Below are positions 12,464 through 45,535 of a stretch of DNA of 64,000 nt, piece after piece. Below the pieces are notes generated by a model that ran no database searches, was not told the DNA's origin, and was given only the letters and a program-made list of their open reading frames with translations. Source of the DNA: Macrostomum lignano (taxonomy: Eukaryota); the NCBI GenBank assembly GCA_002269645.1, contig NIVC01001269.1:1-64000 (forward strand), given 5' to 3'. The translations under genes were made by a program, and so were the position numbers. The number at the start of each line of letters is the position of its first letter. Within the stretch, counting starts at the first letter, position 1.

Positions 12464-13567
12464 ATGGTGAGTTAAAGCATCATGGTTTTTCTTTGAAGCT
12501 GAAACCACGAATAATCAATGACCTTGACGTTTATCCACCTCTAGACCAACGAGACAATTAGCAACCTCATCCCGTCTGAAGGAGGCTTCGAGAAATTCAA
12601 CAGGTTGATCTTCTCCTGGCTATTCCCCCTCGTGATGGCATTCGGGACCTTCGGCAACGCCTCGTGCATGCTGGTGCTCCTGCGAAGACCAAAGTGCTTT
12701 CCTTTCTCTGTCCGGCTTAGCATGCTCAGCTGCTGCTTCGTGGACTTCCTGCTCGTCGCTGTGAAGTCCATCACGCACTATTTGTCCCCAGTCGTCATGG
12801 GAACAATCCTAAACGTTAGCGACTATAGAAGGACCTCGAGCTTAGCCGTGTGCATCTTATACTACTGGCTAACCATCTGGCTTCTGCATGGTAGCCCGTT
12901 TTTCCGTCTGGGCCTCTGCTTTCACTCGCTTGCCGTGACTCTGGTCCCGCTCAAGCAGGCCACGTTGCTATGCAAAAGGAACGTGGCACTGTACCAGCTG
13001 CTACTGCTGCTGTTGAGTCTTATACCCAGCACCAGGATGTTCAGCACCTACTGGGTTGTTAAGTTACACAAATGCTTTTTCTATGAGGACTGGATTGAGG
13101 TTTTCTACAGGATATTCACGGTGTTTGTAGGCCGAATTGTAGTGGTAGTGTGTCTGTTGGTGACCCTGCTGGTCATCTTGCTGGGCGTAAGGCGCACGCG
13201 GGACCACCTGCGCGGATCGGCAGTGTCTGTCAGAGGGCCCCAGACCAAGGCAGTGACCAGCATCTTTGTGATGACTAGCGCCATTTTCTTTGTGTGTGAA
13301 ATGCCGTACAGCATACTTAGAATGCTTCAGACGCTGGAGTTAGTCCATTGGACAAGGATGCTCAGCTACATTGCTCTTCTGCTGAATGGTCTGATGTACG
13401 TAAACCCGGCCCTGAACTGGCTGCCCTGCCTGATTGGAGCAAAGTTCCGGCTCGAATGCATGAAGATGTTCTGCTGCTTGTGCTGCCGGTCTCTAGATAG
13501 GTCCAGATTCGACGACATGTCAAATATACAGCGGTCAAATCAGCAGAGAGCAACCACTAGTACCTAA
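12464..13567 (+). CDS. Class-A-like 7TM receptor, paralogue 3 (intact, 2 exons)
   Basis: ATG 12464-12466, intron 12467-12544 (gtgagt...ctctag), exon 12545-13567. Near-identical to paralogue 2 through TM5. Confidence 0.85.
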
Positions 13568-15591
13568 GCGATGCAGTCTGCCTGATGAGATAAATAGGAA
13601 TCCAACTTGGTTCCGACAAAAACAAGTATAAGAAATCTAAAAGCCCTCTGAATTTAAGAGGTCCCACATTGTCAACTTATCAATCACTCTGTCCACAACA
13701 CTATAGCTACAATTTAGCTTTTCAAGCCAGCTACCACGTAATCCAAACAAGACTGTTAGAAATTGAAATATCCCTTTATCACCTTCCTATAATCTTATTT
13801 TGTTTTCTTCGTTTTTTTCGAACACGAAGCACTATTTATAACTATACAGTCTCAAGACTTGCTATGTGCATGCACAAAAAACTTTGCAAACGTTATCTAC
13901 TTAGCTTGAAAGCAGCTGTATCCATTAAAACGCTTGCTTGAAATCAAGACGTAAATAACGATCACGGTATACAGTGAACTTTTTTAAATAGCTAACCTGA
14001 TAAAAGACGCTGAATGTCGAAATATGTCCTTAATAGATGTTTTTCGTGTAAAATACATAATGTAAACTGAGAATTAAAACCTAAAAAACTTGCACTTTCC
14101 AGATTTAAGTGAGAAAAATCAAGCACATTCAGCAAAATTGACTCATCATTCTTTGCGATAGTTTCTTCTCGGGCTGGTATGAGCTAAAAGATCGCATAAT
14201 GAAGTTGCAACTTGTTTTTTTCTACTACTTTTAGTAAGAAACGGAGCATCTAGGCAATTGCATTATCTCATCTCATCTAAAAATTTTAAAATTGTTTTTG
14301 GGCTTTGGAAGAACCAGTAAACTTAGAACTTTTTATGCGAAGTATAATGCAAAATTGGGAAAAATAAAAGAACAAATCCTTGTACTCGTATATTTCTGGT
14401 ATTGTACATTTGTTAGTTTGCAACCGGAATGCTAACTAAATGAAGACTGCTCAGAGAAGGCTCACTCGAACCCCAGTCAAAGGACGCCTTAAATTACACG
14501 TCAAGAAAAGATCATTCTTCATTTGATGGCGGTTGAACCCGTCCTTAAAAATGCATTTTCTTAGAGATTTAGAACAAGATTTTTTTATCGTTTCGTAATT
14601 TTGAGTCATGTCTGTCTTAGTAGACTTCTTTTTCAATTTTACAGTTGCAGTAAATTTTATTGGGGTTTTACTTCACGTGCCATCATCATTTGTGATTGCG
14701 TAACAATGAGAGGTCGTTGAGCACTTTAATGTATCCAATGAAGTTCCTTATTTACTCCAGTTGCTGAATATGGTAAGTGACAGAAATTGTTGAAACGAAA
14801 TCAAATTCAATGCTTTATTTTTGTTTAACAGAATGCTGCACTGACTTCACAAACGATTGAACTTCTTCAACTTTTCATAGGCTCGACTAGGAGAGGGGGC
14901 TGTTCCAGTAAAATATCCTGTAAAATGCTATAATTCCATAACACTTAAAAAAAGAAGAAAATACTTTTTCTTGGCTCTTTACTTGTCAACACACGGAGTA
15001 GACGACGTTCAGATAGGTAGCAAATGTGGAAACCTTGCAGTCGAAGTAGCCATGATGACCCACTCCATTTTTATACATTAATCAGCTGTCAACTCCTCAA
15101 GCTGTCTTTCATTACGGCTGTGGCTAAATTCAAATCAAGCAGGAAATGGAAATGCATAGCCAATGAACGCAGAGTTGAGGTGAATATAGCTTCTACGGAC
15201 TGGCTGAGACTGGACTGGTCCAGTGATGAAAAAATGTTTTATATGAAGAATATAAAAACATACCTGCCTACCGACAGACCATTTTTAGTATACGGAAGTA
15301 GCGGATATCATATTAAGATGCTCGGTATCTGAAACAGAATCTAAACAGCTATTTGAAAACCTCGAAAATATGGTGGTGAGTAATTTCTGGGGGGCCTGGC
15401 GCTTCTTCTTAAAACCGGGCAGAATAATTTACGATTTCGTCCTTTTAAAAGCTCTTCAGACTAAATAATGACCCGGGTAAAAATTCAAAGAATAATTTCT
15501 CACATCCATCGAAGTATAGGAATAAGATAAAATTTTAATAATCACAGGATGGCTGTAAGCCACCCTGATGCCACGCCTAAGACGACAAAAT

Positions 15592-15730
15592 CCCACAACC
15601 ATCGCCGAGGCAACTCTGCCCATTCCGCTGTCTTCTGAGCACATACAGTCGTGCTAATGCTGTACACAGGTCTGCACACATTCATACACACTCTCACACA
15701 GGGTGTACAGGGTAATCGTCAGGAATTTAC
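15592..15730 (+). repeat. Dispersed repeat family B, copy 1
   Basis: Shares ctgcccattccgctg...ctgagcaca...ctgtac...cacaca(g/a)ggtgtaca...taatcgtcagg with four other copies in the window. Confidence 0.75.
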
Positions 15731-15873
15731 ACTCTCTGTGTCAAAAGTCCAAAAATAGTCTGAAAGGCATCTTCATCAATTAGAATTTAATATCCTCCAT
15801 TGAGGTGTGTTGAGTTTTCCTCAACACAGTTTTGAGTTTTGAGGAGCCGCTTGTGTTTTCCTGTTTTCCTAGA

Positions 15874-16497
15874 CCTCCGCATCCTCATAAACTAGACCTC
15901 CGCATCCTCATCAGCTAGTCAGCATCCTTCATCAACTAGACCTCATCATCCTCCATCAACTGGTCAGCATCCTCATTAACTAGACTTCCGCATCCTCATC
16001 AACTAGACCTCCGCATCCTCATTAACTAGACCTCCGCATCCTCATCAACTAGACCTCCGCATCCTCATTAACTAGACCTCCGCATCCTCATCAACTAGAC
16101 CTCACCATCCTCATCAACTAGACCTCACCATCCTCATTAACTAGACCTCCGCATCCTCATCAACTAGACCTCCGCATCTTCATTAACTAGACCTCCGCAT
16201 CCTCATCAACTAGACCTCCGCATCCTCATCAACTAGTCAGCATCCTTCATCAACTAGACCTCACCATCCTCATCAACTAGACCTCACCATCCTCATTAAC
16301 TAGACCTCCGCATCCTCATCAACTAGACCTCCGCATCTTCATTAACTAGACCTCCGCATCCTCATCAACTTGACGCTCAGCATCCTTCATCAACTAAACC
16401 TCATTATATCCTCATCGACTAGTCAGCGGCCAGCATCCTTCATGAACTAGACCTCAGCATCTTTATCAGCTGGACACTCATCATCCTTCATCAACTA
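15874..16497. repeat. 23-bp minisatellite
   Basis: Unit catcctcatcaactagacctccg with variants. Confidence 0.9.
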
Positions 16498-16956
16498 CGA
16501 GTATCTAACACTTCAACGAAGTTGCTGAATCGATTCAATAAATGATATACCATAAGTATATCCTATAAGTATATCATTGATCAAACTCTAGATTTAATCA
16601 CTGTCTCAATAATCCCGGTTACTGAAAGATAAATTCCGTCTCTGACAGGTCAAGGACGCCAAAACAGCGTAGGCGAACTTCAATGCACTTTTAGTCTACA
16701 CGCTTTTATTAACATCGAATGCAGGCCCAGCCCAAGCATGTCATAAAAGGTAATTAGATTCAGTGGACAAACAAGCATTCTACCTACATACGTTACAACA
16801 AAATTATCATCAATTAAAGGAACTGAGTAAACATTCCCACGCGTTGAAGTTCAGGCCTGCATTAGCAAATCCCACTTGAGCGTCTGCAACTTACTCACAG
16901 AGTTACAGGAGCTCTAAAGGCTAGTCAAATATTGTAACTCTATCCATCCATTCCAG

Positions 16957-18007
16957 TCAAACGCATCTTCGACTAGCGCATCGCTTGAGGCCTATGAAAT
17001 CTTCTACAGACTTGTGTTTTCCTGGCTCTTTCCACTGCTGATGCTGTTCGGAACCTGGGGAAATTTATCCTGCCTGCTGGTGCTGTTAAAGAGGCCCAAG
17101 TGCTTTCCACTCTCAGTGAGACTCAGCATGCTCATCTGCTGCGTTATCGATTTTTTACTAGTCTCTGTCAAGTCAGTGACGCACTATCTATCCCCCAACG
17201 TGATGGGAACCATTCTAATGGTGCACGACTACAGAAAGAACACGAGCCACTTTGTGTGCATCGTTTATTACGCCGTCACCTTCTGGCTGCTGCACGGCAG
17301 TCCCTTCATCCGGCTGGGGCTGTGCTTTCACTCGCTGGCGGTCACGCTGGCCCCGCTGAGGCAGGCCAGTCTGCTTCGGAAGCGGAATGTGATCATCTAC
17401 CAGCTAGTGCTGCTCCTGCTCAGCTTTGTGCCATGCATCCGGGTAGCCAGCTCGTTCTGGTCCACCAGATCAGACCGGTCTGTTCCGCAACGATTCAATT
17501 GAAGTTTTCTATCGGATTTTCACTGTTTTTGTGAGCAGACTTTTTGTTGTCTGCTGTCTGCTGGTCACGCTGCTGATTATCTTGATTAGCATGAGGCGCA
17601 CGAGGCAACAACTTGGCGGCTCGGTGGTCTCTGGGGTCAGGAGCGGGCCGCAGACAAAGACTGTCACCAGCATCTTTGTTTCGACCAGTCTGATCTTTTT
17701 TGCTTGCGAAATGCCCTACAATGTGGCCAGGGCCCTGGTCAACCTAGAGCTGGTCAAGGAAAGTGTTTCCATAAAGCAGACGCTGCTCATGCTAAACAAC
17801 CTGCTGTACCTGAATCCGGCGCTAAACTGGATGCCCTACCTGATTGGCCGCAAGTTTCGACGCTTGTACACCGAGTTTTACAGCTGCAACAAGTGCTGCC
17901 GAAGCAGAGCAACCAACGTCCATGGACAGAGACGCGAGCATATTCTGATGCCAGAGAGCTCTGTTCAAAGAAATAATCTTGATAATGAGCAGGTGTACAC
18001 TTACTGA
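16957..18007 (+). pseudogene. Class-A-like 7TM receptor, paralogue 4, single frameshift
   Basis: Acceptor ttccag at 16956, then SNASSTSASLEAYEIFYRLVFSWLFP. The frame breaks near 17479 (about -2 bp versus paralogue 1) and resumes LFRNDSIEVFYRIFTVFVSRLF to the stop at 18007. Could be an assembly indel in an intact gene. Confidence 0.7.
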
Positions 18008-18349
18008 CTGCTGAGACTGAAGTAATTTCCGTGCTGTTTGATGACCATGAGCTCAAAAAGCAATTAAATAGACAGTTTGAAATCTTAAAATGTTATCTGC
18101 GAAACCATCTATTAGCTCTTACGGCAAAATATCCCCTGTAGCACCGTCCCATTCTCCTGTCTTTCTCCCATAGTGAGGAGTCTTGCTTCTATTGCAATTT
18201 TATTCTCTATGAACCCCTTTTACTCGTAGTATCATAGCTAACAGATTTGCTTGCCTCTTTCTTTTTATTTTATTTATTTTTTACGTCATTTTATCTGCTA
18301 ATAAAATGCTTCATTTTAAATGTTTTCTAATCTCGACTATTATAACAAT

Positions 18350-18625
18350 AATTAAAAAAAATAATAATTTATTACACCTACCCTAATAGGGAGATGTCCA
18401 ACCGACAACTCAGCCGCAGTTATTGCTGCGCACGGTTGTTCAGTCCAAGGACTGGGGAGTCGCCACACACCCTCAAATACCCCAGCTAATGCTGTCACCC
18501 ATTTTACAGCTGATTGAACTGAAGCAATACAGAGTTAAGTGTCTTGCTCAAGGACACAAATTGTTCCGATTGGGGTCGAGAATCGAACCCTCGACCTTTC
18601 GGTCATGAGTCCGTCCGTCTCTGTA
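18350..18625 (-). mobile_element. tRNA-derived SINE family A, copy 1
   Basis: Minus strand reads B-box ggttcgattc, then tgtgtccttgagcaagacacttaactctg...cagctgtaaaatgggt, then a TTA-rich tail. Confidence 0.75.
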
Positions 18626-19275
18626 CATGAGCGAGTACATGATTTCCTTTTCTCTCTGTCTCCCGCCAAACTTGCGCGATCCCCCTTCTCACCCAGTCTT
18701 CTCACCCACATTTTTCACTGTTATTACTTCTATTTCTACGATTTCACCTACAGTGTACATGCACTCACCCACTCTTTCCCCAACTGCTCACGCAACTCCC
18801 CTATTGTTGGCTCTCTTTCCCCGCCGCATACTATTTTCTTCCGTTATATTACTCTAAGTACACATCTTCATACATTGTCCTCCCTAATCCTTCCTAAGTT
18901 TCTACGTCGTAGTTGGTTCGCACAGCCTTGCACACCCCATTTGCACAATTTTTTATCTACTGTTCAACCCGTTACTTTCCTATTTCCTGGTTTGCTCCTT
19001 TGTTCTCTGACCCTCTATCTCTACCGGACCCCCGAATTGCGTCACTGTCTACTCGAATGCGCCCACCTCCCTCCAAATCTTCATTCTCCCTCATTTACGA
19101 GCGTATCACGGGTGACCCGAAAGATAATATTTTTTTTAGAAACAGGTCAGTGACTTCAGAAGACCGGGGCCGATCAGAAAGAGGGTATCATGGCAACGAC
19201 CTTGGAAAGCATCTTGTGACCAACTAAACACCTTTTGAACACCAATGAAAGTATGCGTAAAGAAGTCTAAAAACC

Positions 19276-19598
19276 TGCCTACTGATCACCCTGATGGTGA
19301 TTCTGGTCAGTGTGAAGGGCACCCGCAAGCAGCTGGGTGGCTCGGTCACCACATGCGGAGGTTCACGACTTGGCTGTCAGACAAAGATCGTGCCAAAAAT
19401 CTTTGGCTCGAACGGCCTCATCTTCTTTGCTTGTGAGAGTCCTTACAGCATTATGAGAGCCCTGGTCAACCTGAATATCGTAGAGGAAAGTGAAGAACTA
19501 TTCGATATATGTTGTTCTCCTGAATATGCTCTGGTGTACCTCAATTCCGTGCTATACTGGCTAACCCTTACCTCATCGGAATAAATTTTCGTCAGCAG
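19276..19598 (+). pseudogene. 7TM receptor fragment, paralogue 5 (TM5-TM7 only, decayed)
   Basis: CLLITLMVILVSVKGTRKQLGGSV...QTKIV...LIFFACESPYSIMRALVNL aligns with paralogue 4. TM1-4 are absent and there is a frameshift near the end. Confidence 0.8.
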
Positions 19599-20602
19599 CG
19601 GAATTTTCGGAATTTCATCATTGATAGTATATTTTTGGAACTCTGAATACTACTTCAGATAATTCTAGAATAGGAAACTGATGTAAAAACTTGTATCTCC
19701 AGCACATTTTTGGTGAATCGAAACGATTTGTAATGTAGGAAACAATTTCGAAAAATACGCAAAATCGTCTGCCGTATTTAAAACAAAACATTTAAATCAG
19801 ATAAAAGTAGGTAAGTTTCATAGGCGAGCTGACGATACTCATAGGCGAGCTGACGATATAGCAAGAGGCGCATGCAGTGCAAGATATCAGGAAACAAAAT
19901 AGTACATACGAGCTACTTCATAGAAGGTGAAAAGGTTCGTATTGTCAGTGGCATTCATTTTGAAATAGCTATAAGCAAAACGAGAAACGGGTTAAAGCGC
20001 GATCAAAGTTAGTGCACCACAAAAGCAAAAGCAGTATAATAGTTTTTATAGTAATTACGATGCTCTCGGTTGAAGCACGAGTGTCTTTTGATGTATGAAA
20101 ACAGTAGCAGTAAACCAAAATTAACTTCATTTATTTTTATCTAGAAAAATTCCATAACCACTTTTTGACAAATGGGTAAAGCAGACAGAATAACAAAAAG
20201 CTTCTCGTGGTTAACAGGCGTCACATCGTCGACAGGTGTGAGCCACGTGCCAAAACGTCACTGACATTAAGCAATTTAGCAGATACTCAGAAGGCAAATA
20301 AGTCATTTTCATAGTTTCAATCATTGCTGATTTAAAGATGAGCGAAAGAGCTTTGACAATTTCACAAAAAAATTGTTGCGAGTGACACCTAATTACTAAA
20401 GAAATATAAATTGGCTACTTTTATTGTTTGCAAACATGCAGAAAACGAAGGCTTTCCTTAGAGCTAGCTATATCTAATAAAAACAATGATGTAAAGACGT
20501 CATAATTATGATTTCACGTATCCGTACGTAGCAGAAAGTAGTTAAAAATTAGCATAAAGATGCCTAATTAGTTATTTTACAATCACACAGTTTCGAAGAG
20601 GT

Positions 20603-23600
20603 CTATCGTAGAGGTGGAAACCTCAGTCTTTTCCTATTTGTCGATCGGTAGCACGCGATCGTCCTGTTTTCATTGGTTGCTGCTGTGGTGTGCGATGCGA
20701 ACGGCAACACTGACATCAGGTCGTCGTTCATCAAATCGAACTGGTTGATAAGTACGTTGCACAGCGTCAGAATGAATCTTCCAGAACACATGCTCCCTTT
20801 GACAACACTATGGATGTACAGACAGTCCTCATGTTGACCTACGTTCAGGTCGCCGACGCTTCGAGCCTCTGTTCGCGCCTGAACATTGCCTCGGTTTGCT
20901 TGAACAATAAAAACCTTGGGCTTGTTTTTCAGCTGCGGGCACATTCTGAACTGTTTGTACACACTTTTCAGTGAGACGCGACTTCCGTCAGCTGAGTACA
21001 CGTAGCCCTGCTCTCCGTGCGACAGGATGCAAAGAACAAGTGCGTCCTCCTCAGCGTACTCTTCTGGCTGCCGGTCAATCGTCAGGAGGTGACCGAAGGT
21101 CTCATGAGACGGGTTATTCAAGCTGAGGACGTCGAAGCCTAGCCGACTAAAGCAAATATAAAATCTATCGTCCATGAGAGATCGCGGTGGAAGATTTGTC
21201 TCTGGTGGAAAATTAGTGACTTGTATTAGGATGGCTCTTCCGCGACGTGCACTTTGCATCGGATAGTACGGAGAAGAATCTGGATCGTCTGGACCACCAC
21301 CATCATCGCCACCACCGCCACCACCTCCACCACCACCACCGCCACCACCTCCACCACCACCACCGCCACCATCGCCACCACCACCACCGCCATCTCCGCC
21401 GTGGCCGTTGCCTCTGTCGCTTGGCTCCTCCACAGGAGAGTTGGATGGATCGCCGCTCTCTTCAGGTTGGTAGCCGCAGCCGGTTTCGCTATCAATACTT
21501 AATCCACTTTCGCTTCCTTCGCTTGTTGGTGCGTGCTGTAATCTAAAATTATAATATATTGCCTGTGTTTGAATACTAATCCAAAGTAACTACGAGATCA
21601 AGATAAAATAGCAAACAACTTACATCAAGCGTGAACAGTTGATGTGACCGGAAAACTTCGCCCATTGATAAGCGTTCATATCCCTCTCTCCGGTCAAGCG
21701 CCAGTAATTCGCGTCTTTCATCAACTCTCCGAATATTTTAATGACCTCAATGTGGCCGCAGCGAGCAGCCCAGATCAGAGGTGTGTTGCCGAAGCAATCT
21801 TTCAGCCATAAATTTGCTCCGAAGTCACACAACATTTTGAAAGTTCCTGCGTGACCCTGTTTTGCTGCGTGGACTGCAGCTGAAAATTTATACACGTCCT
21901 GAAAAACAATTAGCATTTTCTTAGGGTTTCATTCATACCAAAAAGCAGGTTTAAATTTTTAACCTCACCTGGCAATCTATATCAGCTTTCATTTTGATGA
22001 GCTGCTCCAAAACAGATTTCTGGTCATTTATGGCCGCCAGAATCAGCGGGGTTTGTCGAAGATTATTTTCTCTATTTACTTCTGTCGTCATAGTGCTGGC
22101 GTTGTTTGTCAATATTTTCTCAAACGCTATCAGGACTTCTTTGTGGCCTTTGAGGGCGGCCCAGGAAATGGCTGTCCGACCCATTACATCCTGGACACTG
22201 ACCAGGGATGTGTCAGAATTTCTATTGAGCAGCGATAGTACCAGGTCATGTTTGCCTCTGGCGGATGCGATTGTTAGCAGAGTCTGATTCAAAGTCCCAA
22301 ACTTGTGGGCTGTATTCTCCTGAGATCTGCACAGGGCTGCAAGCTGCGCGTCCGACCACTTATCCGGGGACGCAGAGCTGAATATCCTAATTTGTGATGC
22401 GATAGATGGATGTAATGGATGTGATACGAGTATCTTTCACTTTTGATAGCCCCAGATGTATAGCATTTTATTTGTCTATCTAATAAAATAACAATTAAAA
22501 CATCAAATGGAATTTAATTATCAATGGTTGCTAATAAAGTTTGTACTTAAGAGATTAAAGCAGTGGTATCTGCGGATGTCTAAAACCAAGAAACATGGCT
22601 AACAGTGACAATAACTTACTGCACATCGTCAGATGCAGCGCTATTCAAGAAGAATTTCTTGATCAGACTGGTGACTGCAGAAGCTTCAGTACCGAATTTT
22701 TCGGATCCACCTTTCATCTCGGGCATGCCCAGCCGCCTGTTCACCTCTGCCACCACGTTCACAATGTGCTCTTTGCTGAATTTTTCCTCTTGAACAACGG
22801 AGCATAGAACCTCAGCAAGCGATCCCTTCTCGCCTAGTGAGCCACCGCGGCAGAGAAGAAAGTCTTTCTCAGGAAGTTTAAACGACGTCTCTTCCAGCGG
22901 GCAGGCGTTTAGGGTTTCAGGCTGCTGCTCAGTCTGAACAAAGAAGATCTTCGGTTTGTCCTTTAGAAAGGAGCACTGGTTGACTCGGAACCTGGCCACG
23001 ATGTCTCTTACTTCGACCTCTTCACCGTCGCTAGCGAAGAAGCTGGCACCGGTCCCGTGTCCGATGATGAAGCACACGAAGCTGCCCACGTCGCGGAGAT
23101 CGGACCTGACTATTTTGTTGACCGCTGCAAAGATTTCAGCACTAGTAGGCTTACTTGTGCATGGTTGGATTGTAAAACCAAGGTTTTCGAAGGTGTCGGT
23201 AATTATTTTAACTTCCTTCTGTTGGTTGTGGCTTGAGCTGCGATTGTAGGTCTCGACACTTATTACCAAGCACAGGCCTTTTGCCGTAATGCTCTCTGTG
23301 TATATGTCGTTTTCCGGCTTGTTTGAAGTTGAACTAAATGAAAATGTGCAAAATAGATTTCCAAATATTTTCACCACAATGATTCGAAAGATTCAAATTT
23401 TAGCAAAGATTTGTGTGAAGCTGACTTACGCGACAACTTGCTCTTCGCCAATCCTAACATGCGAATGAGCCCCATCAAACTGTAGCTCATGTTCCTCTTG
23501 GCCTTCCGTTTCAAACGCAGGAACCTTGCACGTCAGTCCTCCTTGTTCTGGTTTAGAAAAATATTTAAGTTAGTACTAGATGTACGTCACCTGGTGCCAG

Positions 23601-24810
23601 TGGCCAAAATGCCAGGTCAATTCGATATTCAAGCCTTGTACGAGCTAGAAAGCCAGAAAAGTTAGGAATCGAAAAGTCGGGAAAAACATGCATGTGATTG
23701 CTTTACCTTGATCATAAATGAGAGGATGCTTCATCAATTCGATAGCCAGCATCCGGTCACTCGGTTGTTTTTCAGTGCATTTGTTATAGAAATCTTTCAG
23801 ATTAGCCGAGCAACTTTCCGGAAGCACTGGAGCCCCCTGCCGTTCCACCCGGCGAACAATGGCCAGCATGTTCTTGCACTCCCAGTAGGGCCGTTTGGCG
23901 ATCACCATCTGGTAGATCACGCAGCCGAACGCCCACACATCGGAGGCGCAGCTATAGGGAGGGTCCTCGGTCTCAGAAGACAGGAACATCTCAGGCGCCA
24001 TGAAGTGCGGGTCGCCTCTCTCCCCAGTGGACGGATGCTCCGTTACTGTTTGGAGAATCTGGATGGCCAGACCAAAATTGACGATCACAATTCGATCGCC
24101 CGGACAAACGAGCACCGTCTTGCAGTTGATGTTACGGTGAATCACCGGATCGTTGAGGCCGTGCAAATATGAAAGGGCGTCGCATATCTGAAATCAGTCG
24201 GTGATTCAGGATTTTAATATCGTTGTTTAAATAAGCAGCCGAACACGTTTTTAAAATAATTGCCAATTTTTACTGTTAATTTTCTTATCCGCGTTTAAAT
24301 AAGTGGTCATGGACTTCTTAGTGAAGTCGTGTATTTTTCTATTAGCTCATTAGCTCGTAGAAGTCATTAAGACCCTTCGAGTACCCTTCAAGCCCTGGCT
24401 GGGTTCATGGCAAAAAAAACTTTCGATAATGTACAATTTTGCAATTATTTATTACGCACCTGTCTTGTAAGATTACAAATGCTCTTCTCCGGCAAGCCTT
24501 GTTGGGCGGTGATATGCCGTTCCAGAGTTACCGGTCCCGAAAGCAAGCTCATCTGTACGGTCACGCACATCTGCTCCTTGTCCACCATGATTCGTTTGAA
24601 TTTGACCACGTTTTTGTGATCCAATGCGCACAGCTTCTTAGCCTCTTTGTCGCAAGCCTTAGTCAGAGTTTCTAGCTTATCATGAGCTCCAGCTTCGACA
24701 AGATGCCATGGCAGGCGGATTTGTTTTACAGCCTGCAGTTGCTCTGCCTCGCCCACCGCTTCGGCGTAAGTTTCGCCTCGATCGCCTCTCGATAGAAGCT
24801 CCCGGACCAT
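20603..24810 (-). CDS. Gene A: pseudokinase - caspase-like - ankyrin repeats - poly-Gly - caspase-like protein (1095 aa)
   Basis: Exons 24810-24460, 24187-23707, 23547-23430, 23333-22620, 22377-21969, 21898-21624 and 21542-20603. All introns are GT-AG with phases 0,1,2,2,0,2 and the total is 3288 nt in one open frame. Kinase motifs AVK, HRNINCKT, VNFG, MAPE. Caspase motifs IIGHG/KPKIFFVQTEQQ and ILSHG/KPKVFIVQANRG. Ankyrin motifs GRTAISWAA, QTPLILAA, GNTPLIWAARCGH. An extra upstream exon cannot be excluded. Confidence 0.85.
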
Positions 24811-26083
24811 TGCTTGGCTTAGGGGAGAGTTTCAAAACAGTGTTTTACAGCTTCATGTGAGCTTCAAATTTACCTGTAATTTTTTGCCAGTGCAGTTAAT
24901 GTTTAACTGCAGTGTCTCTGCTTAGCCGTAAAAAAGTGGCAAGGCTTTTTAAAAGCTGTCTAGCTATAGTGTCATTGGTAGCAAGCTTACTCTGTCAAAT
25001 AGAGGCTTGTTTCTCTTGCCATTATAATACCTTATCTGTCTTTTCTCTTTTCTACCCCTAGTTTTCTAGCGCTGTCCAATAATATTTGGTTCTGTATGAA
25101 GAATTAAGTACAGTCTAGACAAGTACTTGCGTTGTAGGGTATAGACTGGGAGAGAAACTATCTGGGGGAGGGTTAATGTACATTAAGTACAGCACGTTGC
25201 TGTCAGGCAGCATTCTGGAGAGTTTTACACACTGCTTTGCATATCAAATTGAAAAGAAAAGAAAAATAATAAAACAAGAGTTGCATTTCATACCCATTTG
25301 TGCAGATGTTGTCTCTTGGCTCTCATGCCATTTTATAGCCAGCAATTCTTAGAACCTGCTCTCGTAGCATGGAGGCTTAAAACCAACTGGTTTTTAGTTA
25401 GAAATTTGGTACCTTATTCTACTGTACAGCGCTTTCCGCTTAGCTAGCTAGTGCAGCCAGTCCCTATCTGTCCTATTTTAGAAAGAAACAGTCATTTGGT
25501 ATATAAATAATAGCTAATTTCTCACTTAGTAGCTATATGTGAATTCGCTATTGGTAATTTCAACTAGCGGCCGTTGCTCACAGAAGCTTGTTGCAAACTT
25601 TTTTTGCCTGTAAAAAACTTTTGAAACATAACAACTAGTGAGAATTAAACAATCGCGAGTGCGACTGTTTGTGGCTTAAATACAAGGTAAGAAGCTTCAC
25701 GACAAGTGCTTATTTGCTAATCGTACCAGCTTTTGTAGGTCCAAGCGACATGTAGCCCCTGTCAGTGACTCCAGGGGGAGGCGTGGCGGGCCACATCATC
25801 CACGCCGAGTCACACTGCCCACAGGCGGAGTAGGAGGTGCTGCTGCTAGCGCTGCAAACGGGGAGGACAGACATGGGCTCGGCGCTTGTTAAACTGCCTT
25901 CTGGCTGACGACCGCGCACGCTCAAGCCTTCACACACGCTCTGTGGTGTGACGCTGAATGATACTGTTTTATTATCGTGTATGCATATAGGCTATCTGGG
26001 GTTAAATAATTATCCTATCTGTTGCTTTGTCCGAAGATATTTACGTTGGCAAAAGACCGCAACCAATTTTCCTTCACTTCAGC
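24811..26083. promoter_or_regulatory. Putative bidirectional promoter/5' UTR region between genes A and B
   Basis: 1273 bp separates the two divergent ATGs. Candidate 5' UTR introns are 25687-26082 (gtaaga...cttcag) for B and a short gtaaat...ctaag intron just upstream of A's ATG. Based on position only. Confidence 0.45.
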
Positions 26084-29000
26084 ATGGTCACAGACTACTC
26101 AATCGGGGAACAGATCGGTCGAGGCGAGTTTGCTAATGTCCATGCCGTCACTGTCAAGGATGCAGACTGGAACCCAAGACCCACTTGTGTAAAGCTGATC
26201 AGACTACCGAAGCACTTGGATCAAGGTTTAGACGAAAAAGAGCTCACTGAATTGGTAGATAAACACAAGCCACTAATTGGACTGAAACACCGGAACTTAG
26301 TTCAAATTGAAGATCTTCATGCCATTCCTCAAGACTACTCTGTCGCAGTGTTCATGGAGCGGTTTCAAGGAAAAACATTGGAATATTTGCTGAAAACGAA
26401 GGGTGCCATCACCCAAGAAGATAAGATTCGGCTCTACTCCAAGCAGGTGAGCACTGCATGGATTTCTATGACGTGTTAATTCACAAGCCCCATAACTAAA
26501 CAGTCTCTGACTTATATCCAATTAATTAGTTGGTTTTTAATTTGATTAAGCACAATTTTCAACTTCTCTGCAGATCTGTGAAGCTTTGAAGTATCTCCAC
26601 CACGACTTAAAGGACCCGGTCATTCACAGAAACATCTGCAGTAAAACAGTTATGATAGACGACAACGATTTAGTTAAGTTAATTGACTTTGGCATATCCA
26701 TTCAGCTGATGGATGCAGTGAGTCATCAGGTGACGCAGTGTCCGAGAGGCCACCCGAACTACATGGCTCCAGAGTTGTTCTTGGAGGAATCCAGCTCTGC
26801 ATTCCAGAGCCTCTACAGTCGGGGCTCAGACATCTGGGCTTTCGGTTGCGTTGTGTACGAGATGACCACTGGTGCGAAACCGCTTGGAGATTGCAGAAAC
26901 ATGCTGGCCATAGTTAACAAAATCAAATATCACGGAGCTCCAAACCTACCGGAGGCGAGCTCTGAGCAGCTGAGAGACTTCTATAAAGGCTGCATGAGAA
27001 AGAATAGGAAAGAGAGAATGTCGGCAGCAGATCTGCTACGACACGAGTTTCTCAGTCCTGGTATGCAATTTTATGGTTTTTTGAGCTAAATTTATATTTT
27101 TCACTGTTATTTTGGCTAGTTGTTAACTAATATAAGCTCTCTTTTAGTATATGACAAACGCTGGGACAATGTCCGTCTGCTGAGCAGAGGAGGCTTCGCA
27201 GAAATTCACGAGGCTCTCACAGACAAGGGCATCAGTTGCGCCGTAAAAACTCTGAAGCTGCCCCTTCAACTAGGTGATCAACGTGACAAAGTGCAGAGAG
27301 AAACCGATCGGGCTATCGAAAGCGAGATGAACCTGTGCAGATTACGGCATGAAAACATCGTAAAGATTTTTGACATTGTGCAGCCAGAGATTGCCACGGT
27401 TGTTGTGTTCATGGAGCTGCTGGATGGCAAAACTTTGGAATTGGTGATAGATGGAAAACCACTGGATGAGGGAATGATTCGTTTTTTCGCTTCACAAGTA
27501 AGCATGAATACTGAGTTGAATTATCAGGTTTGCTCATTATCCTGATCGCATTACTTTCGTTTACTCGCATTTCAGATCTGCAGCGCACTTAGCTACATGC
27601 ACAATCAGCCAGAAAAATCAGCCGTGATTCACAGAGACCTCAACTGCTCAAATATCGTGATTCTAAATGATAGCAAAGTCAAGTTGATTGATTTTGGCTT
27701 ATCGCACAGGCTAGGAACGTCGATAAGTCACAGCACCGCCTCGTCAGTGAAGGGCACGCTGAACTTTATGGCGCCGGAGCTACTGGGTGACGACGAAAAA
27801 ATTGTGTACAGCACAGCATCAGATGTCTGGGCATTCGGTTGCGCCGTCCACCAGATGGCCACTGGAGAGCGGCCGTTCGAGAAAATTAAAAACTTAAATC
27901 GTCTTATTCGCACTCTGAAAGAGCAAGGCGCCCCAGTATTGCCAGATTCGTGTTCGAGTCTGCTGAAAGATTTCTATGCCAGTTGCGTTATGCGCCAGCG
28001 CTCGGAGAGGGCGTCCGCTATGGCGTTGATGAAGCACGAGTTTCTGACTTTCAAGTAAGTCTGCTTGCATTTTGTCTATTAAAGTTCATATTTTATATCA
28101 ACGATAGCTCCGTATTTTTGTACTTTTAGTCGAGCATATTGTTTCCTTTCATTCCTTTAATTAGAGCCTCAGAGTACAAGGATGAAGACCGATACGAATC
28201 CAGTGCTAGCCAGAAAGGAATGTGCGCAATCATTGACATGCTCCCATCTGGCTCGGACTCAAAACTCTCTTCTAAAATCAGCAAAAGTTTTGAAAAGTTC
28301 GATTTCATCGTCAAGTCGCTACCAGACGCAACCTGTCAAACCGCTTGGAGCTTCATCGGGGACATCGCAAACAGTCAAGAGCTTGCAGACTCAAAATGCT
28401 TTGCTTGTTTTGTTATAGCTTCCGGTTCGAACGGACAACTGTACTCAGCTGACAATGATGATAGCATTGAAATCAGAGATCTGCTGGCCAGGTTTCGCTC
28501 TAGCCAGTGTCCCAGCCTGAAGGACAAGCCGAAGCTTTTCTTTATTCAAGCTGTGCAACCGGCCAGTGCAGCCGCCGGCTTGGACGAATCCGCGGCGCGA
28601 ATTCGAGACGATGACTTTCTGGTTTGCATCAACGATGGCAACCTGGATTCATCGTTCGTTGGGACATTGTGCACTGTTTTAGAAGAGGACGAATTTAGCG
28701 ACCTAGACATTGAAGGAGTTGTGGGTGAGGTGAACGATCGCCTAAAACTGGAACCGTTGGTTAAAGCGAAAAACCGGGCACTTAAATTCATGTCGGAAGC
28801 AGTTTCCACTCTGACGAAGAAATTTTACCTGAAGCCGGAACGGGTGAAACCGGATCCCAGGTGAGCTTTTTCGTTGTTTTAGAGGCTTATTGAGAAGAAT
28901 GCACAAAAATTAGCTAAATCAGCAACACTAATTGCTGGTATTCGAGGAGCACTTCATCCTGCAGACAAACAAGTTTCCAGTACCTTACTTACCTAACTTA

Positions 29001-31727
29001 CTTATTGCTCAATGAAACGGTTGGGCCCGATGATGCCATACGTGTCCATCTTTGATCACTTCGCTTCCACCACAAGAGCTTTATTTAAAACAGTTGCTTA
29101 GTGAATAGGAGGGATTTCTTATTCTTCCCATTGATTCATACTGTTTAGCATAGAAAGATAACAAATATTTCAGAGCGGAGTCGCCAGAAAAGTGGGACGA
29201 TGAACAATTGAAGAGGCTAATAGAGGAGGAGGCAAGTCAATGCGCGAACCCGGACTTCACCAGCCAAAAGTACGGCCCGTTGGGACAGACGCTGCTGTCG
29301 ATCGCAGCAGAGAAGGATAGCAGCGAGTTAGTTAAGCTTGCGCTCCAGGCAGCGACCACTGTTCCATCCATTCACTCGGATCTCGACGTGATGGGCAGGA
29401 CGGCCCTTTCCTGCGCCGCAGCCAAAGGATCAGACGCGGTTCTGGCCGCTTTCGAACAAGCATTCATCGATGCGGCCGATGTTCAGAAATCAGTGGTCAA
29501 CGAAGCCAACTATATGCGCCAGACTCCCATCATTGTGGCAGCCAAGCAAAACAAGACGAATGTTCTCGAGAAGTTGGTTCAGATGGGAGCCGATATCAAT
29601 CAGAAGGTAAGGCGGTGTTGATACCCTTTAGTTTTACTCGAAATTATATATTTCAATTACAAAAATGTTTTATCAGCTGTGAATCGCGAAAAACAGACAG
29701 AGATACGAATAGAAATAAACAATGCAGGATAGGAACCAATTGCTGATTTATTGCATAGTTTAAGAAGTAACTTTGTGGCCTTTATCAAAGGGCTCAAGAA
29801 ATTGTACAGCTGTATCCATGCGCAGATGCCCGACCAATCATGATGTTCTCTTTTGCTGTCTCGATGCGGTCTTCTTAAAGCTATTGATACGAAACAAATA
29901 TGTTTGCGTTTTTGCGATCGCCTACCGGCTTTCACGTTGGTCTTTTTGGGACTTTGAGACCTGGCTCTCATGATCTTTAGTCAGATGCATCTTGCGTCGG
30001 AACATTTGAAGGGGTTTTATCTCTGGGTTTGAGTGGCTAGAGTCGTCTGATCTGTATGATCTTCAACAGTTGCATCATTCGATATTTGGCTAATTAGTGT
30101 TAGTGTTTATAACTTCCGTCGTCTCTACCTTCCATTACTTTTAGAGTTTGTACTTTCTGTACATCCAGCTGATTTACATTTCAGGATATTGTAGAAGCCA
30201 CCGCATTGATCTATGCGGCTAAATTCGGATTTGTTGACGCGGTGCGCAAGCTGCTGGAACTCGGCGCCGATGCAGTTCTGGCAGACCGTTCGGATCAAAC
30301 ACCGCTAATTTGGGCAGCTCGCTGTGGCCACACCGATGTTATCAACGCTCTATCTGAAAAGCTTAATAGTCTGGAGCTCTGGAACCACCGGAGCACGCGG
30401 TTGCGCAACTTTACTGCGCTTGAATGGGCTAAGCTCTGCGGCCATGACGCCACTGCGGACAGGATTCAGCAGATGTAAGTAATTGGCGACGTAATTTTTG
30501 TTCCAATGGCTGAATGCTCTGTAGAAATCTGCACCTCCTGCTTTCATGGGCGTAGGAAATTGGCCGTCACGAGGGTCCTCCGTTTCCACCAGACTATTTA
30601 AAATTTTTCCGTGAATATCTCCTAAGATACTAAACTTTTTCCTGTCTTTAACCCTCACAATGACACGCATGAGCCATCCATGATCCTGTTAAGCTGTTAA
30701 GAAGTTTTTAATTATTTAAATATTTTAAATGATCGATGCAAACTATTTCAGAATTCAACAGATAACCGGAGCGACACAGGAGGCGGACGCCACTACCGAC
30801 CCACAATCAAGGGGTGGCGGTGGCGGTGGTGACGGTGCCAGTAGTGAAGCGACAGGAACTTCCGCCGGAGGAAGCGGCGGCGGAGCCGTTGGTGGAGGAG
30901 GTGGTGCTGATGAAGTTGGTGGAAGGGGTGCCGGTGGCGGAGGTGCCGGTGGCGGAGGTGGCAGTGGCAGTGGTGCCGGTGGCGGAGGTGCCGGTGGCGG
31001 AGGTGGTGGTGGCGGAGGTGGTGGTGGCTGGCCTATTTACCATATGAACAGCCCAGTCAGAGGCCTAGCAATAGTTATCAGTCGGAACACGATTCCACCA
31101 AATGCAGGTTTTCAGAACATACATTGGGTGCCGGATCAGCAGACTCAATCTTTTGTCGGTTGTTTAAGCGACCTACGCTTCGATTTCTTAGTGCTACCAA
31201 ATATTCCGAGAAACCTTTATTATAATCTCCGAACCACGGTACTCAATTTGCCGACGTATACCATCTCTGATTCTCTTCTCCTCTGCCTGATGTCTTATGG
31301 CGAACACGGCCGAGTGTATGACTGCAATGGAGAGCGTGTTGAGCTGGAAACAATGTTTCGACAGTTCAGAGAGTGTCCGCTGCTCTCTGGTAAGCCGAAA
31401 ATATTCATGGTCGATGCTGGTCGCGACATTCCTCATGAGAGACTGGTGTTGGAGCAGGCAATTCAGGAGAACGCGGGCCAGCACCAGGACTGTATTTACA
31501 TTTACAGTGTTGTAAAAGGAAACGCCTGCTACCAAGAGGTAGAGAACGGCTTTTGCTTCATGCAGTCCATGGTGAATTTACTGCGCTGGCCAAGTTTCGA
31601 TTCAGCCACGGAAGATTTTGCGTCCTTTCTGACGAAAGTCGTCAGCGACGTGTCGAACAAGTGCACAGCAAAGCAGATTGTCTGCCACACGAGCACCTTG
31701 CAGCGCCATATCATTTTAGGAAATTAA
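26084..31727 (+). CDS. Gene B: pseudokinase - kinase - caspase-like - ankyrin repeats - poly-Gly - caspase-like protein (1357 aa)
   Basis: Exons 26084-26446, 26574-27060, 27148-27497, 27576-28054, 28165-28860, 29174-29606, 30185-30474 and 30752-31727. All introns are GT-AG with phases 0,1,0,2,2,0,2 and the total is 4074 nt in one open frame. Kinase 1 has HRNICSKT/DFG; kinase 2 has CAVK, HRDLNCSN, DFG, GTLNFMAPE. Caspase motifs VIASG/KPKLFFIQAVQP and LMSYG/KPKIFMVDAGRD. About 6 ankyrin repeats. Confidence 0.88.
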
Positions 31728-32888: not shown

Positions 32889-33542
32889 CAGTGGCGTATA
32901 CTCGAGAATTTTATTTGCAGGATTTGCAACATTACAGAGACCAGTATTTGGTCTCTAGGTTAATACCTCGATCGCTTGTTGGGCGCCCCTGTCTCTTGGT
33001 GGGTGCCCCTGTCTCTTGGTGAGCGCCCCTGTCTCTTGGTGTGCGCCCCTGTCTCTTGGTGGGCGCCCCTGTCTCTTGGTGGGCGCCCATATCTCTTGGT
33101 GGGCGCCCCTGTCTCTTGGTGGGCGCCCCTGTCTCTTGGTGGGCGCCCATATCTCTTGGTGGGCGCCCCTGTCTCTTGGTGGGCGCCCCTGTCTCTTGGT
33201 GGGCGCCCCTGTCTCTTGGTGGGCGCCCCTATCTCTTGGTGGGCGCCCCTGTCTCTTGGTGGGCGCCCATATCTCTTGGTGGGTGCCCCTGTCTCTTGGT
33301 GGGCGCCCCTGTCTCTTGGTGGGCGCCCCTGTCTCTTGGTGGGCGCCCCTGTCTCTTGTTGGGCGCCCATATCTCTTGGTGGGCGCCCCTGATCTCTTCT
33401 AACAAGAGAAGGTAATTAAACACGAGCCCCTCTGTCATTCGTCAAGCTCGCGGTTACCTCTTATTTAGTTTCTTGGGGATTACAATTATTATAAAGGGGC
33501 CATTGGGGGGGGGCACCTCCACCCTAGCTGCGTACGCCACTG
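32889..33542. mobile_element. Non-autonomous hAT-type element containing a 20-bp tandem array
   Basis: TIRs cagtggcgta (32889) and tacgccactg (ending 33542); perfect 8-bp TSD agacatgt at 32881-32888 and 33543-33550. Internal array of gggcgcccctgtctcttggt at ~32980-33390. Confidence 0.9.
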
Positions 33543-42481: not shown

Positions 42482-42574
42482 GCTGTATGTTTGGGGGACT
42501 CTGGGCGGAACATGTTTTTTTGTTGTTTATTATTTCACTTACCTAGTAAAACCTATAGGCCATAATAATAAGCT

Positions 42575-45480: not shown

Positions 45481-45535
45481 GAGGATACAAACAAAAACTA
45501 ATTGGCACAGTTTCGCTTGCACAGCCAGTCGGCAG

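What the first reader, a model, noticed from the sequence alone, without database searches (positions are those of the whole stretch)
20603..31727. Head-to-head paralogue pair resembling a sensor/executor module
Seen: genes A and B are divergently transcribed with ATGs 1274 bp apart. They share domain order and the intron phases from the first caspase onward (2,2,0,2), yet are strongly diverged in sequence. Only B has a predicted active catalytic site. Established: head-to-head paired immune genes with split labour are known in plants (RPS4/RRS1, RGA4/RGA5, Pik-1/Pik-2). Inference by analogy only: co-expressed A and B form a heterocomplex in which A senses or inhibits and B signals. This is my best candidate for an undescribed system in the window.
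Basis: inference. Interest (0 to 1): 0.85.

Follow-up and report, generated by a model that had tools for sequence, protein, structure and literature searches.

The report
Head-to-head flatworm pseudo-caspase/kinase gene pair
Two neighbouring, oppositely oriented flatworm (Macrostomum lignano) genes encode large kinase–caspase–ankyrin–caspase proteins in which every protease site is dead and only one kinase domain (in gene B) still looks active; the pairing is real and recurs at a second locus, but that the two proteins work together as a sensor/executor is still only a guess.

Summary
Gene A (minus strand, 24810→20603, 7 exons, 1095 aa) and gene B (plus strand, 26084→31727, 8 exons, 1357 aa) are divergent paralogues with ATGs 1274 bp apart. 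They are about 37% identical and share intron phases 2,2,0,2 from the first caspase exon onward. The source is Macrostomum lignano.

All four caspase domains lack the catalytic Cys. A's kinase and B's first kinase lack catalytic residues. Only B's second kinase is canonical (HRDLNCSN…DFG); it occupies the place of a mini-exon found in A and in two paralogues.

Both genes are intact and under purifying selection against a second M. lignano copy (dN/dS 0.30 and 0.34), including several dead domains. That copy keeps the head-to-head layout despite a 1.4-kb insertion. A paralogous locus (P0005/P0007, both with intact C-terminal caspase dyads) is also head-to-head.

The family is a Macrostomum-restricted offshoot of flatworm ANK caspases; one member was noted by Horkan et al. 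2024.

Most likely A and B are pseudoenzyme regulators, cFLIP-like, with B's second kinase as the only catalytic output. The plant NLR-pair analogy has no domain-level support. Co-expression and interaction remain untested.

The parts
20603..24810 (-). Gene A, 7 exons: 24810-24460, 24187-23707, 23547-23430, 23333-22620, 22377(or 22386)-21969, 21898-21624, 21542-20603. It encodes 1095 aa: pseudokinase, mini-exon, pseudocaspase C1, ankyrin repeats, poly-Gly linker, pseudocaspase C2.
   Evidence: Exon plan matches UniRef P0008/P0192. All splice sites are conserved in L003. dN/dS is 0.30, p=1e-6.
26084..31727 (+). Gene B, 8 exons: 26084-26446, 26574-27060, 27148-27497, 27576-28054, 28165-28860, 29174-29606, 30185-30474, 30752-31727. 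It encodes 1357 aa: pseudokinase K1, kinase K2, pseudocaspase C1, ankyrin repeats, Gly-rich linker, pseudocaspase C2.
   Evidence: Matches P0001/P0002 through exon 7. Splice sites of exons 1-6 are conserved in L003. dN/dS is 0.34, p=6e-8. The last intron's acceptor is inferred from phase conservation with A, P0005 and P0007.
24811..26083 (.). Shared 1273-bp spacer between the two start codons. It is unique sequence and a candidate bidirectional promoter region. Block 25411-26010 is 99% identical to the other copy.
   Evidence: Conserved block versus introns: Fisher p=0.007.
26062..26083 (+). Polypyrimidine/AG acceptor (ttttccttcacttcag|C) immediately before B's ATG. It is a possible cis- or SL-trans-splice site. 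In the other copy a 1371-bp insertion sits just upstream of it.
   Evidence: Use of the site is an inference.
24068..24145 (-). Degenerate catalytic motifs of A's kinase: VIHRNINCKT (Asp→Asn, catalytic-loop Asn→Thr) and IVNFGL (DFG Asp→Asn).
26619..26696 (+). B kinase 1: VIHRNICSKT (Asp→Asn, Asn→Thr), with DFG retained. Predicted pseudokinase.
27148..28054 (+). B kinase 2 (two exons, 829 nt, phase 1→2). It occupies the place of the 118-nt mini-exon of A, P0005 and P0007. AVK (27240-27260), HRDLNCSN (27624-27653) and DFG (27684-27701) are all intact. This is the only canonical catalytic site in the pair.
22620..23333 (-). A pseudocaspase C1: His kept (IIGHGTG, 23048-23068), Cys→Glu (FFVQTEQQ, 22922-22945).
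28165..28860 (+). B pseudocaspase C1: His→Ser (VIASGSN, 28412-28432), Cys→Val (FFIQAVQP, 28538-28561).
   Evidence: Purifying selection p=0.009.
20603..21542 (-). A last exon: poly-Gly linker (repeat 21293-21392) plus pseudocaspase C2. SHG kept (21005-21028), QACRG→QANRG (20888-20908).
   Evidence: AlphaFold model pLDDT 69.6, pTM 0.72; best PDB match caspase-7, TM 0.78.
30752..31727 (+). B last exon: Gly-rich linker (repeat 30919-31028) plus pseudocaspase C2. SHG→SYG (31287-31310), QACRG→DAGRD (31407-31427).
21624..22377 (-). A ankyrin-repeat region (two exons, phase-0 intron).
   Evidence: Purifying selection p=8e-4.
29174..30474 (+). B ankyrin-repeat region (two exons, phase-0 intron at the homologous column).

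Best explanation
A and B are an old inverted-duplicate pair. They belong to a Macrostomum-restricted gene family whose proteins run kinase, caspase-like domain, ankyrin repeats, flexible linker, caspase-3/7-like domain. This is an elaboration of the flatworm 'ANK caspase'.

Shown:
- Both genes are intact. RNA-seq-guided annotation of the other genome copy covers both.
- Both are under purifying selection, including several dead domains.
- Every caspase domain in both has lost the catalytic Cys. B's C2 has also lost the His and, by eye, the Asp-binding pocket residues.
- A's kinase has lost the HRD Asp, the catalytic-loop Asn and the DFG Asp.
- B's first kinase has lost the HRD Asp and the catalytic-loop Asn.
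- B alone carries an inserted, canonical second kinase.

Inferred:
- The two proteins act without proteolysis, as pseudoenzyme scaffolds or regulators of a kinase/caspase signalling route.
- They engage partners through their retained caspase folds (caspases work as dimers) and ankyrin repeats. The partner may be the other member of the pair or the paralogues that keep intact dyads (P0005/P0007, P0216, P0224). This is how the pseudocaspase cFLIP modulates caspase-8.
- Phosphorylation by B's K2 is the only enzymatic output, possibly controlled by the adjacent pseudokinase K1 as in JAK-type tandem kinases.
- The short shared spacer makes co-regulation plausible but unproven.
For: - Domains and gene models.
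- Organism and family.
- Catalytic-residue table.
- C2 profile matches caspase-3/-7 (E 4e-33). The A-C2 model matches the caspase-7 fold (TM 0.78).
- K2 aligns to PLK2 and MAP3K5 with HRD and DFG in register, and groups with canonical Ank-kinase paralogues.
- K2's two exons replace the mini-exon with the same phases.
- Window versus L003: no stops or frameshifts, and all compared splice sites kept. dN/dS is 0.30 for A and 0.34 for B. It is individually significant for A's pseudokinase (0.14, p=2e-5), A's ANK, B's K1, B's K2 and B's pseudocaspase C1.
- The pair layout is kept in L003, and a second head-to-head pair lies at L001.
- Family relatives with other domain architectures (P0010, P0216, P0224) have no partner within 10 kb.
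- Annotation of Mlig_3_7 is RNA-seq-guided. It gives 846 + 243 aa for A' and 1356 aa for B'.
- Literature places an M. lignano kinase-caspase as sister to ANK caspases.
Against: - There is no expression, interaction or phenotype data (searches found none).
- Purifying selection on A's two pseudocaspase domains is not significant on its own (p=0.33 and 0.42, too few substitutions).
- B's C2 could not be compared, because L003 ends before it and no database protein contains it.
- One UniRef model of the B type (P0001) uses an alternative acceptor that ends the protein before C2.
- Domain trees disagree: C1 groups A with P0005, C2 weakly groups A with B, and quartet sites split 22/16/16. The history of the pairs, and so the age of the linkage, is unresolved.
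- K2's glycine loop is degenerate (S-R-G-G-F-A), so its activity is predicted, not shown.
Confidence: 0.5

Rival explanations
1. Independent paralogues. The head-to-head layout is just the footprint of an inverted tandem duplication (or of two such events). A and B have separate functions, promoters and partners, and linkage persists only because nothing has broken it.
For: - Domain trees give no consistent A/P0005 versus B/P0007 orthology, which is compatible with independent duplications or mosaic evolution.
- The spacer accepts a 1.37-kb insertion in the other copy.
- The spacers of the two pair loci share no sequence.
- B has been remodelled by the K2 insertion independently of A.
Against: - Both loci with this architecture are head-to-head pairs, while three relatives with other domain architectures (P0010, P0216, P0224) are unpaired.
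- A 600-bp block of the spacer is more conserved between copies than the introns (99% versus about 96.6%, p=0.007).
- Catalytic loss is complementary rather than random.
Confidence: 0.3
2. One reading: a plant-NLR-like immune pair, in which dead A acts as sensor, decoy or inhibitor and B as the signalling executor within an obligate heterocomplex driven by a bidirectional promoter.
For: - Divergent orientation with a 1273-bp spacer.
- Pairing recurs at L001 and L003.
- A has no canonical catalytic motif in any of its three enzyme-like domains, and B retains one kinase.
- The family shows lineage-specific expansion and domain shuffling typical of immune or death signalling, including a weak Mab-21_C-like N-terminus on one ANK-caspase relative.
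Against: - No NLR-type domain is present.
- No integrated decoy distinguishes one partner.
- B's caspases are dead, so the 'execution' could only be phosphorylation.
- No infection-response or expression data exist.
- The analogy rests on gene orientation alone.
Confidence: 0.1
3. Decaying duplicates: A and/or B are pseudogenes or on the way to becoming so, and the loss of catalytic residues reflects relaxed constraint.
For: - Catalytic residues are lost in five of the six enzyme-like domains that are dead.
- dN/dS of A's C1 and C2 is not distinguishable from 1.
- Public models of both genes are truncated before C2 (P0001, P0008).
Against: - The ORFs are open over 1095 and 1357 codons.
- All splice sites are conserved, and there are no indels in A and one in-frame 6-nt indel in B exons 1-6 across two copies.
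- dN/dS is 0.30 and 0.34, with p of about 1e-6 and 6e-8, and 0.14 for A's pseudokinase.
- Transcript-guided annotation covers both genes.
Confidence: 0.05

Closest known systems
Platyhelminth ANK caspases (caspases with an ankyrin-repeat pro-domain; Horkan et al. 2024, PMC11463336, who cite Lee et al. 2014 for Schistosoma)
   Same: Both have ankyrin repeats directly N-terminal to a caspase domain, and both are restricted to flatworms. [quoted passage not shown] The C2 domains of A, B, P0005, P0007 and the Ank-caspase P0224 form one clade (99% bootstrap).
   Different: - The proteins here have an additional N-terminal kinase plus a second, always Cys-less caspase-like domain.
- In A and B the ANK-linked caspase itself is dead.
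- The genes occur as head-to-head pairs.
- The paper describes ANK caspases as specific to parasitic flatworms, whereas Macrostomum is free-living.
cFLIP (CFLAR) with caspase-8 and caspase-10
   Same: A pseudocaspase paralogue keeps the caspase fold but lacks the catalytic Cys, and regulates an active paralogue by heterodimerisation. The genes arose by local duplication. (Established knowledge; not tested here.)
   Different: - The pro-domains here are kinase and ankyrin repeats, not DEDs.
- Each protein has two caspase-like domains.
- Both members of this pair are dead, and the intact paralogues lie at other loci.
Plant paired NLRs (RPS4/RRS1, RGA4/RGA5, Pik-1/Pik-2)
   Same: Head-to-head orientation with a short shared spacer, and unequal partners.
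   Different: There are no NB-ARC, LRR, TIR or CC domains and no integrated decoy. The resemblance is purely positional.
Tandem pseudokinase-kinase proteins (JAK JH2-JH1 type)
   Same: B carries an N-terminal pseudokinase (K1) immediately followed by a canonical kinase (K2).
   Different: The kinases here are Ser/Thr, STE/MAP3K19-like. The best PDB matches are PLK2, MAP3K5 and MAP3K2, and the neighbouring outgroup clade is MAP3K19. No regulatory relationship between K1 and K2 has been tested.
Kinase-ankyrin proteins (RIPK4/ANKK1-like architecture) and the large M. lignano Ank-kinase expansion (P0004, P0009-P0022)
   Same: A kinase is combined with ankyrin repeats. B-K2 is 49-59% identical to these M. 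lignano kinases and groups with them.
   Different: Those proteins lack caspase domains. Membership of the RIPK family was not supported by the PDB ranking.

Membership tests
Caspases (peptidase family C14A), as active enzymes | Caspase fold / Pfam PF00656 match | tested here: met
   All four domains match Peptidase_C14 (E 8e-18 to 3e-20). The C2 profile matches caspase-3 at E 4e-33. The A-C2 model matches caspase-7 at TM 0.78.
Caspases (peptidase family C14A), as active enzymes | Catalytic His-Cys dyad (SHG … QACxG) | tested here: not met
   A-C1 GHG/QTEQQ, A-C2 SHG/QANRG, B-C1 ASG/QAVQP, B-C2 SYG/DAGRD. The dyad is intact in the C2 of paralogues P0005 (QSCRD) and P0007 (QACRG), and in P0216 and P0224.
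Caspases (peptidase family C14A), as active enzymes | Asp-binding S1 pocket (Arg, Gln, Arg) | tested here: not met
   Read by eye from alignments A1, against caspase-3/-7. A-C2 keeps the first Arg and the Gln but has a deletion over the third position. B-C2 has Ile/His, Asp and Gln at the three positions. Residue numbering comes from my own knowledge.
Flatworm ANK caspases | Ankyrin repeats as the pro-domain immediately upstream of the caspase domain | tested here: met
   Ank_2/Ank hits lie in the two exons before the linker and C2 in both genes.
Flatworm ANK caspases | Phylogenetic placement with neodermatan ANK caspases | not tested
   Literature only. No verified ANK-caspase sequence from parasitic flatworms was included in my trees. 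The two trematode caspases are short (267-294 aa) and did not group with C2.
Active eukaryotic protein kinases | Pkinase fold and β3 Lys | tested here: met
   Pfam Pkinase hits all three kinase domains. The AVK/CVK Lys is present in A, B-K1 and B-K2.
Active eukaryotic protein kinases | HRD Asp, catalytic-loop Asn and DFG Asp | tested here: not met
   Not met for A (HRN…T, NFG) or B-K1 (HRN…T). Met only for B-K2 (HRDLNCSN, DFG).
Plant-type paired NLR sensor/executor | NB-ARC plus LRR (with TIR or CC) architecture | tested here: not met
   Pfam scans of all exons find only Pkinase, Peptidase_C14 and Ank.
Plant-type paired NLR sensor/executor | Head-to-head orientation with a short shared spacer | tested here: met
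   1273-bp spacer. Also seen in L003 and at L001.
Plant-type paired NLR sensor/executor | Physical heterocomplex and genetic interdependence of the two partners | not testable with these tools
   Spliced A and B sequences cannot be submitted to the structure tool, and no multimer prediction or expression data are available.
cFLIP-like pseudocaspase regulators | Caspase fold retained, catalytic Cys lost, gene under constraint | tested here: met
   Constraint is significant for B-C1 and for both whole genes, but not separately for A-C1 or A-C2.
cFLIP-like pseudocaspase regulators | Heterodimerisation with a catalytically active paralogue | not testable with these tools
   Active-looking paralogues exist (P0005, P0007, P0216, P0224). 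Binding is unknown.
Bidirectional-promoter gene pair | Transcription starts less than about 1 kb apart, and correlated expression | not testable with these tools
   Only the ATG spacing is known (1274 bp). No TSS or expression data were found.

The most novel reading that the evidence does not exclude
The kinase-pseudocaspase-ANK-caspase genes of Macrostomum work as obligate head-to-head heteromeric pairs. One locus would be still proteolytic (P0005/P0007). The other (A/B) would have been converted into an all-pseudocaspase module whose output is phosphorylation by B's inserted kinase. Together they would form a previously undescribed animal cell-death or immune signalling system with split labour between co-regulated paralogues.
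Probability: 0.13. Interest if true: 0.8.

Novelty: new variant of a known kind. Interest (0 to 1): 0.5.

Why it matters
Caspases fused to kinases are rare, and I know of no animal protein with two caspase-like domains in one chain.

This family shows, within one genome, a graded series:
- fully competent members (P0216: kinase and caspase both intact);
- mixed members (P0005, P0007);
- an all-dead member (A).

It therefore offers a natural experiment on how proteases and kinases turn into pseudoenzyme regulators.

If the paired layout reflects function, it would be an animal counterpart of genetically paired signalling proteins. It would also extend the cFLIP principle beyond DED caspases.

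M. lignano has RNAi and transgenesis, so the idea can be tested directly. If the pairing is only historical, the locus is still a useful annotation correction. Public models split or truncate both genes, and the C-terminal pseudocaspase of B is absent from the protein database searched.

Tried and rejected
- A six-exon model of A using the weak donor CAT|gttttt was replaced by a seven-exon model once P0008 revealed the mini-exon.
- Orthology of the two pairs (A↔P0005, B↔P0007) could not be established. Domain identities, quartet counts and NJ trees disagree, so I make no claim about one ancient pair versus repeated duplication or conversion.
- The full-architecture profile search of 1.84 billion representatives was swamped by giant ankyrin proteins. 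It added only M. lignano relatives (P0192, P0216, P0224) and no member from another genus.
- The search with B's C2 alone returned nothing. The word-indexed search also failed to return P0005 and P0007, so the absence of hits is weak evidence.
- Spliced A and B could not be submitted to the representative search or the contig look-up. As a result, the part of the second copy (L003) that would contain B's C2 was not retrieved.
- Expression look-ups by gene ID in the full-text library and in the supplements of two M. lignano papers found nothing. The supplements of Horkan et al. are not held.
- The spacer shows no similarity to the spacer of the L001 pair and is not repeated in the window.
- No Rfam family and no tRNA was found in the window.
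- The N-terminus of P0224 as a cGAS/Mab-21 domain rests only on a sub-threshold Pfam hit, with no PDB sequence match. It is left as a lead.
- The pseudogene reading was rejected on ORF integrity and dN/dS.

Full report
**Source and gene models**

The window is eukaryotic. A search with the B model returned almost only Macrostomum lignano proteins. The best, P0001, is 93% identical to B. P0008 and P0192 are near-identical to A.

ORF listing and Pfam scans show two exon series. On the minus strand the order is kinase, caspase, ankyrin, caspase. On the plus strand it is kinase, kinase, caspase, ankyrin, caspase.

GT-AG junction searches, guided by P0008, give these models:
- Gene A has seven exons (24810→20603), encodes 1095 aa and has intron phases 0,1,2,2,0,2.
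- Gene B has eight exons (26084→31727), encodes 1357 aa and has intron phases 0,1,0,2,2,0,2.

The start codons are 1274 bp apart. From the intron preceding the first caspase exon onward both genes read 2,2,0,2, at homologous alignment columns.

Two additions to it:
- A has a 118-nt mini-exon between kinase and caspase 1.
- B has two exons encoding a second kinase in exactly that slot. Both the mini-exon and the K2 exons enter in phase 1 and leave in phase 2.

The paralogues P0005 and P0007 share A's seven-exon plan. B's K2 is therefore best read as an insertion or replacement.

**Divergence and catalytic status**

A and B are 37% identical overall and 33-47% per domain. No other family member lies in the window.

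| Domain | Key motifs | Predicted status |
|---|---|---|
| A kinase | HRN…T, NFG | dead |
| B kinase K1 | HRN…T, DFG | dead |
| B kinase K2 | AVK, HRDLNCSN, DFG | canonical |
| A caspase C1 | GHG / QTEQQ | Cys lost |
| B caspase C1 | ASG / QAVQP | His and Cys lost |
| A caspase C2 | SHG / QANRG | Cys lost |
| B caspase C2 | SYG / DAGRD | His and Cys lost |

These assignments come from alignment A1 and motif mapping.

- K2's motifs align in register with PLK2 and MAP3K5.
- In an NJ tree the kinases of A, B-K1, P0005 and P0007 form a divergent group that shares the catalytic-loop Asn→Thr change. B-K2 sits among the canonical HRDINCSN/DFG Ank-kinase paralogues.
- By eye, the Asp-binding pocket is also partly lost in A-C2 and wholly lost in B-C2.
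- The C2 profile matches caspase-3 and caspase-7 (E 4e-33).
- An AlphaFold model of A-C2 (pLDDT 69.6, pTM 0.72) superposes on caspase-7 at TM 0.78.

'Only B has an active site' is therefore true, but the site is a kinase. There is no protease activity to be expected from either protein.

**Are the genes alive?**

A second copy of the locus exists in the NCBI M. lignano assembly (L003, NIVC01000006.1). It is collinear with window 11016-29810 at 94-97% nucleotide identity. That level fits the subgenome copies described for this neopolyploid.

- All compared splice sites are conserved. A has no indels, and B exons 1-6 have one in-frame 6-nt indel.
- dN/dS is 0.30 for A (34 synonymous and 35 non-synonymous changes, p=1e-6).
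- dN/dS is 0.34 for B exons 1-6 (p=6e-8).
- Selection is individually significant for A's pseudokinase (0.14), A's ankyrin region, B-K1, B-K2 and B's pseudocaspase C1.
- A's C1 and C2 have too few changes to test.
- B's C2 lies beyond the retrieved part of L003 and is absent from the protein database.

The Mlig_3_7 annotation is RNA-seq-guided. At L003 it gives 846 aa plus a 243-aa 'partial' protein for A', broken in the poly-Gly repeat, and 1356 aa for B'. Both genes therefore appear to be transcribed, and for A the C2 exon is joined to the rest. Decay is rejected.

**The pairing**

- L003 keeps the head-to-head layout. It carries a 1371-bp insertion with terminal direct repeats of about 175 bp, 22 nt upstream of B' ATG. 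That position is just upstream of a strong pyrimidine-AG acceptor, which may be a cis- or SL-trans-splice site.
- The spacer is 97.8% identical between the two copies, and block 25411-26010 is 99% identical. Introns are about 96.6% identical, and dS is 0.05-0.09.
- The only other locus found with this architecture is also a divergent pair. L001 holds P0005 on the minus strand and P0007 on the plus strand, with ATGs about 2 kb apart.
- In that pair both C2 domains keep the dyad (QSCRD, QACRG). P0007 is a pseudokinase (HRQ) and P0005 keeps HRD and DFG.
- Relatives with other architectures have no partner within 10 kb:
  - P0010: Ank, kinase, pseudocaspase.
  - P0216: Ank, kinase and caspase, both enzymes intact.
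  - P0224: a weakly Mab-21_C-like N-terminus, Ank and an intact caspase.

Pairing therefore looks like a property of this subfamily. That is suggestive, but it also fits simple inheritance of one ancestral inverted duplication.

Domain trees do not resolve the history:
- C1 groups A with P0005 (100% bootstrap).
- C2 groups A with B (67% in the larger tree, 97.5% in the four-taxon tree).
- Quartet-informative sites split 22/16/16.

**Relation to what is known**

Horkan et al. 2024 describe flatworm 'ANK caspases'. They note one M. lignano caspase with a kinase pro-domain as sister to them. The present family is that lineage.

What I did not find described in the searched library is the second, always-dead caspase-like domain, the complete loss of protease sites in A and B, the inserted kinase of B, and the head-to-head pairs.

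Functionally the nearest precedent is cFLIP with caspase-8: a pseudocaspase that regulates an active paralogue through the caspase dimer interface. For B's K1-K2 the nearest precedent is the JAK-type pseudokinase-kinase tandem. The plant paired-NLR analogy fails every domain-level criterion and survives only as a statement about gene orientation.

**Verdict**

- The anatomy is confirmed and refined.
- The most likely reading (confidence 0.5) is a pair of constrained pseudoenzyme regulators whose only catalytic output is B's second kinase.
- That A and B act together is plausible but untested. Independent function is the main rival (0.3). The NLR-like sensor/executor model gets 0.1 and decay 0.05.
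- Novelty: a new variant of a known kind (ANK-caspase relatives).
- Interest: moderate (0.5). It would rise sharply if co-expression and interaction are shown.

Noticed in passing
window 6634-7638 (+) and 12605-13567 (+); also 2418-3224 (+): Two single-exon ORFs (334 and 320 aa) are 87% identical. Their sequences look hydrophobic and multi-pass by eye, and they have no Pfam hit. A third ORF upstream gives a weak 7tm_1 match. Together they look like a small cluster of orphan GPCR-like genes to the left of gene A.
   Followed up: partly
window 38889-48287: A dense run of minisatellites. It includes a G-rich 14/27-bp array (38889-40054, GC skew 0.68), a 21-bp array (40479-40991), a 38-bp array (43343-44138), a 26-bp array (44745-45481) and a 36-bp × 44 array (46694-48287). 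A CNOT11-domain exon (41858-42481) lies among them.
   Followed up: no
window 53969-56296 (+): A 775-aa ORF carries reverse transcriptase, RNase H and integrase domains. It is an LTR-retrotransposon pol remnant in a GC-rich patch (GC 0.60).
   Followed up: no
window 15869-16497, 32975-33398 and 62963-63737: Further tandem arrays: 23 bp × 27, 20 bp × 21, and 27/54/81 bp. The 23-bp array is also present, with a different copy number, in the other genome copy (L003).
   Followed up: no
L003 3960-5330 (equivalent to window about 26061): A 1371-bp insertion is present only in the other M. lignano copy. It has terminal direct repeats of about 175 bp (93% identical), a GC-rich interior and a short target-site duplication. 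It sits 22 nt upstream of B's start codon.
   Followed up: partly
L001 3437-15367 (NIVC01000166.1): A second head-to-head pair of the same family (P0005 and P0007) has intact C-terminal caspase dyads. The NCBI model of the minus-strand gene (559 aa) covers only part of it.
   Followed up: yes
P0224 / P0340 (L004, NIVC01002235.1): An M. lignano protein has an N-terminus of about 570 aa giving a sub-threshold Mab-21_C hit (E 2e-4). This is fused to the same Ank, linker and caspase module with an intact QACRH site. It may be a nucleotidyltransferase-like sensor coupled to a caspase, but the PDB sequence search gave nothing.
   Followed up: partly
P0216 (L005, NIVC01004603.1): An Ank, kinase, Gly-rich linker and caspase protein in which both kinase (HRDINGNN, DFG) and caspase (AHG, QACRG) motifs are intact. 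It is weakly sister to the dead C1 domains, so C1 probably descends from an active kinase-linked caspase.
   Followed up: partly
window 30752-30812 and the public models P0001, P0008 and P0121: Public gene models are inconsistent at the Gly-rich last exon. P0001 uses an acceptor equivalent to 30780 that shifts the frame and stops before C2. P0008 reads into the intron. NCBI splits A' into 846 aa plus 243 aa at the poly-Gly repeat.
   Followed up: partly
window 61075-61686 (+): An ORF with a weak EGF-domain hit, possibly an exon of another gene.
   Followed up: no
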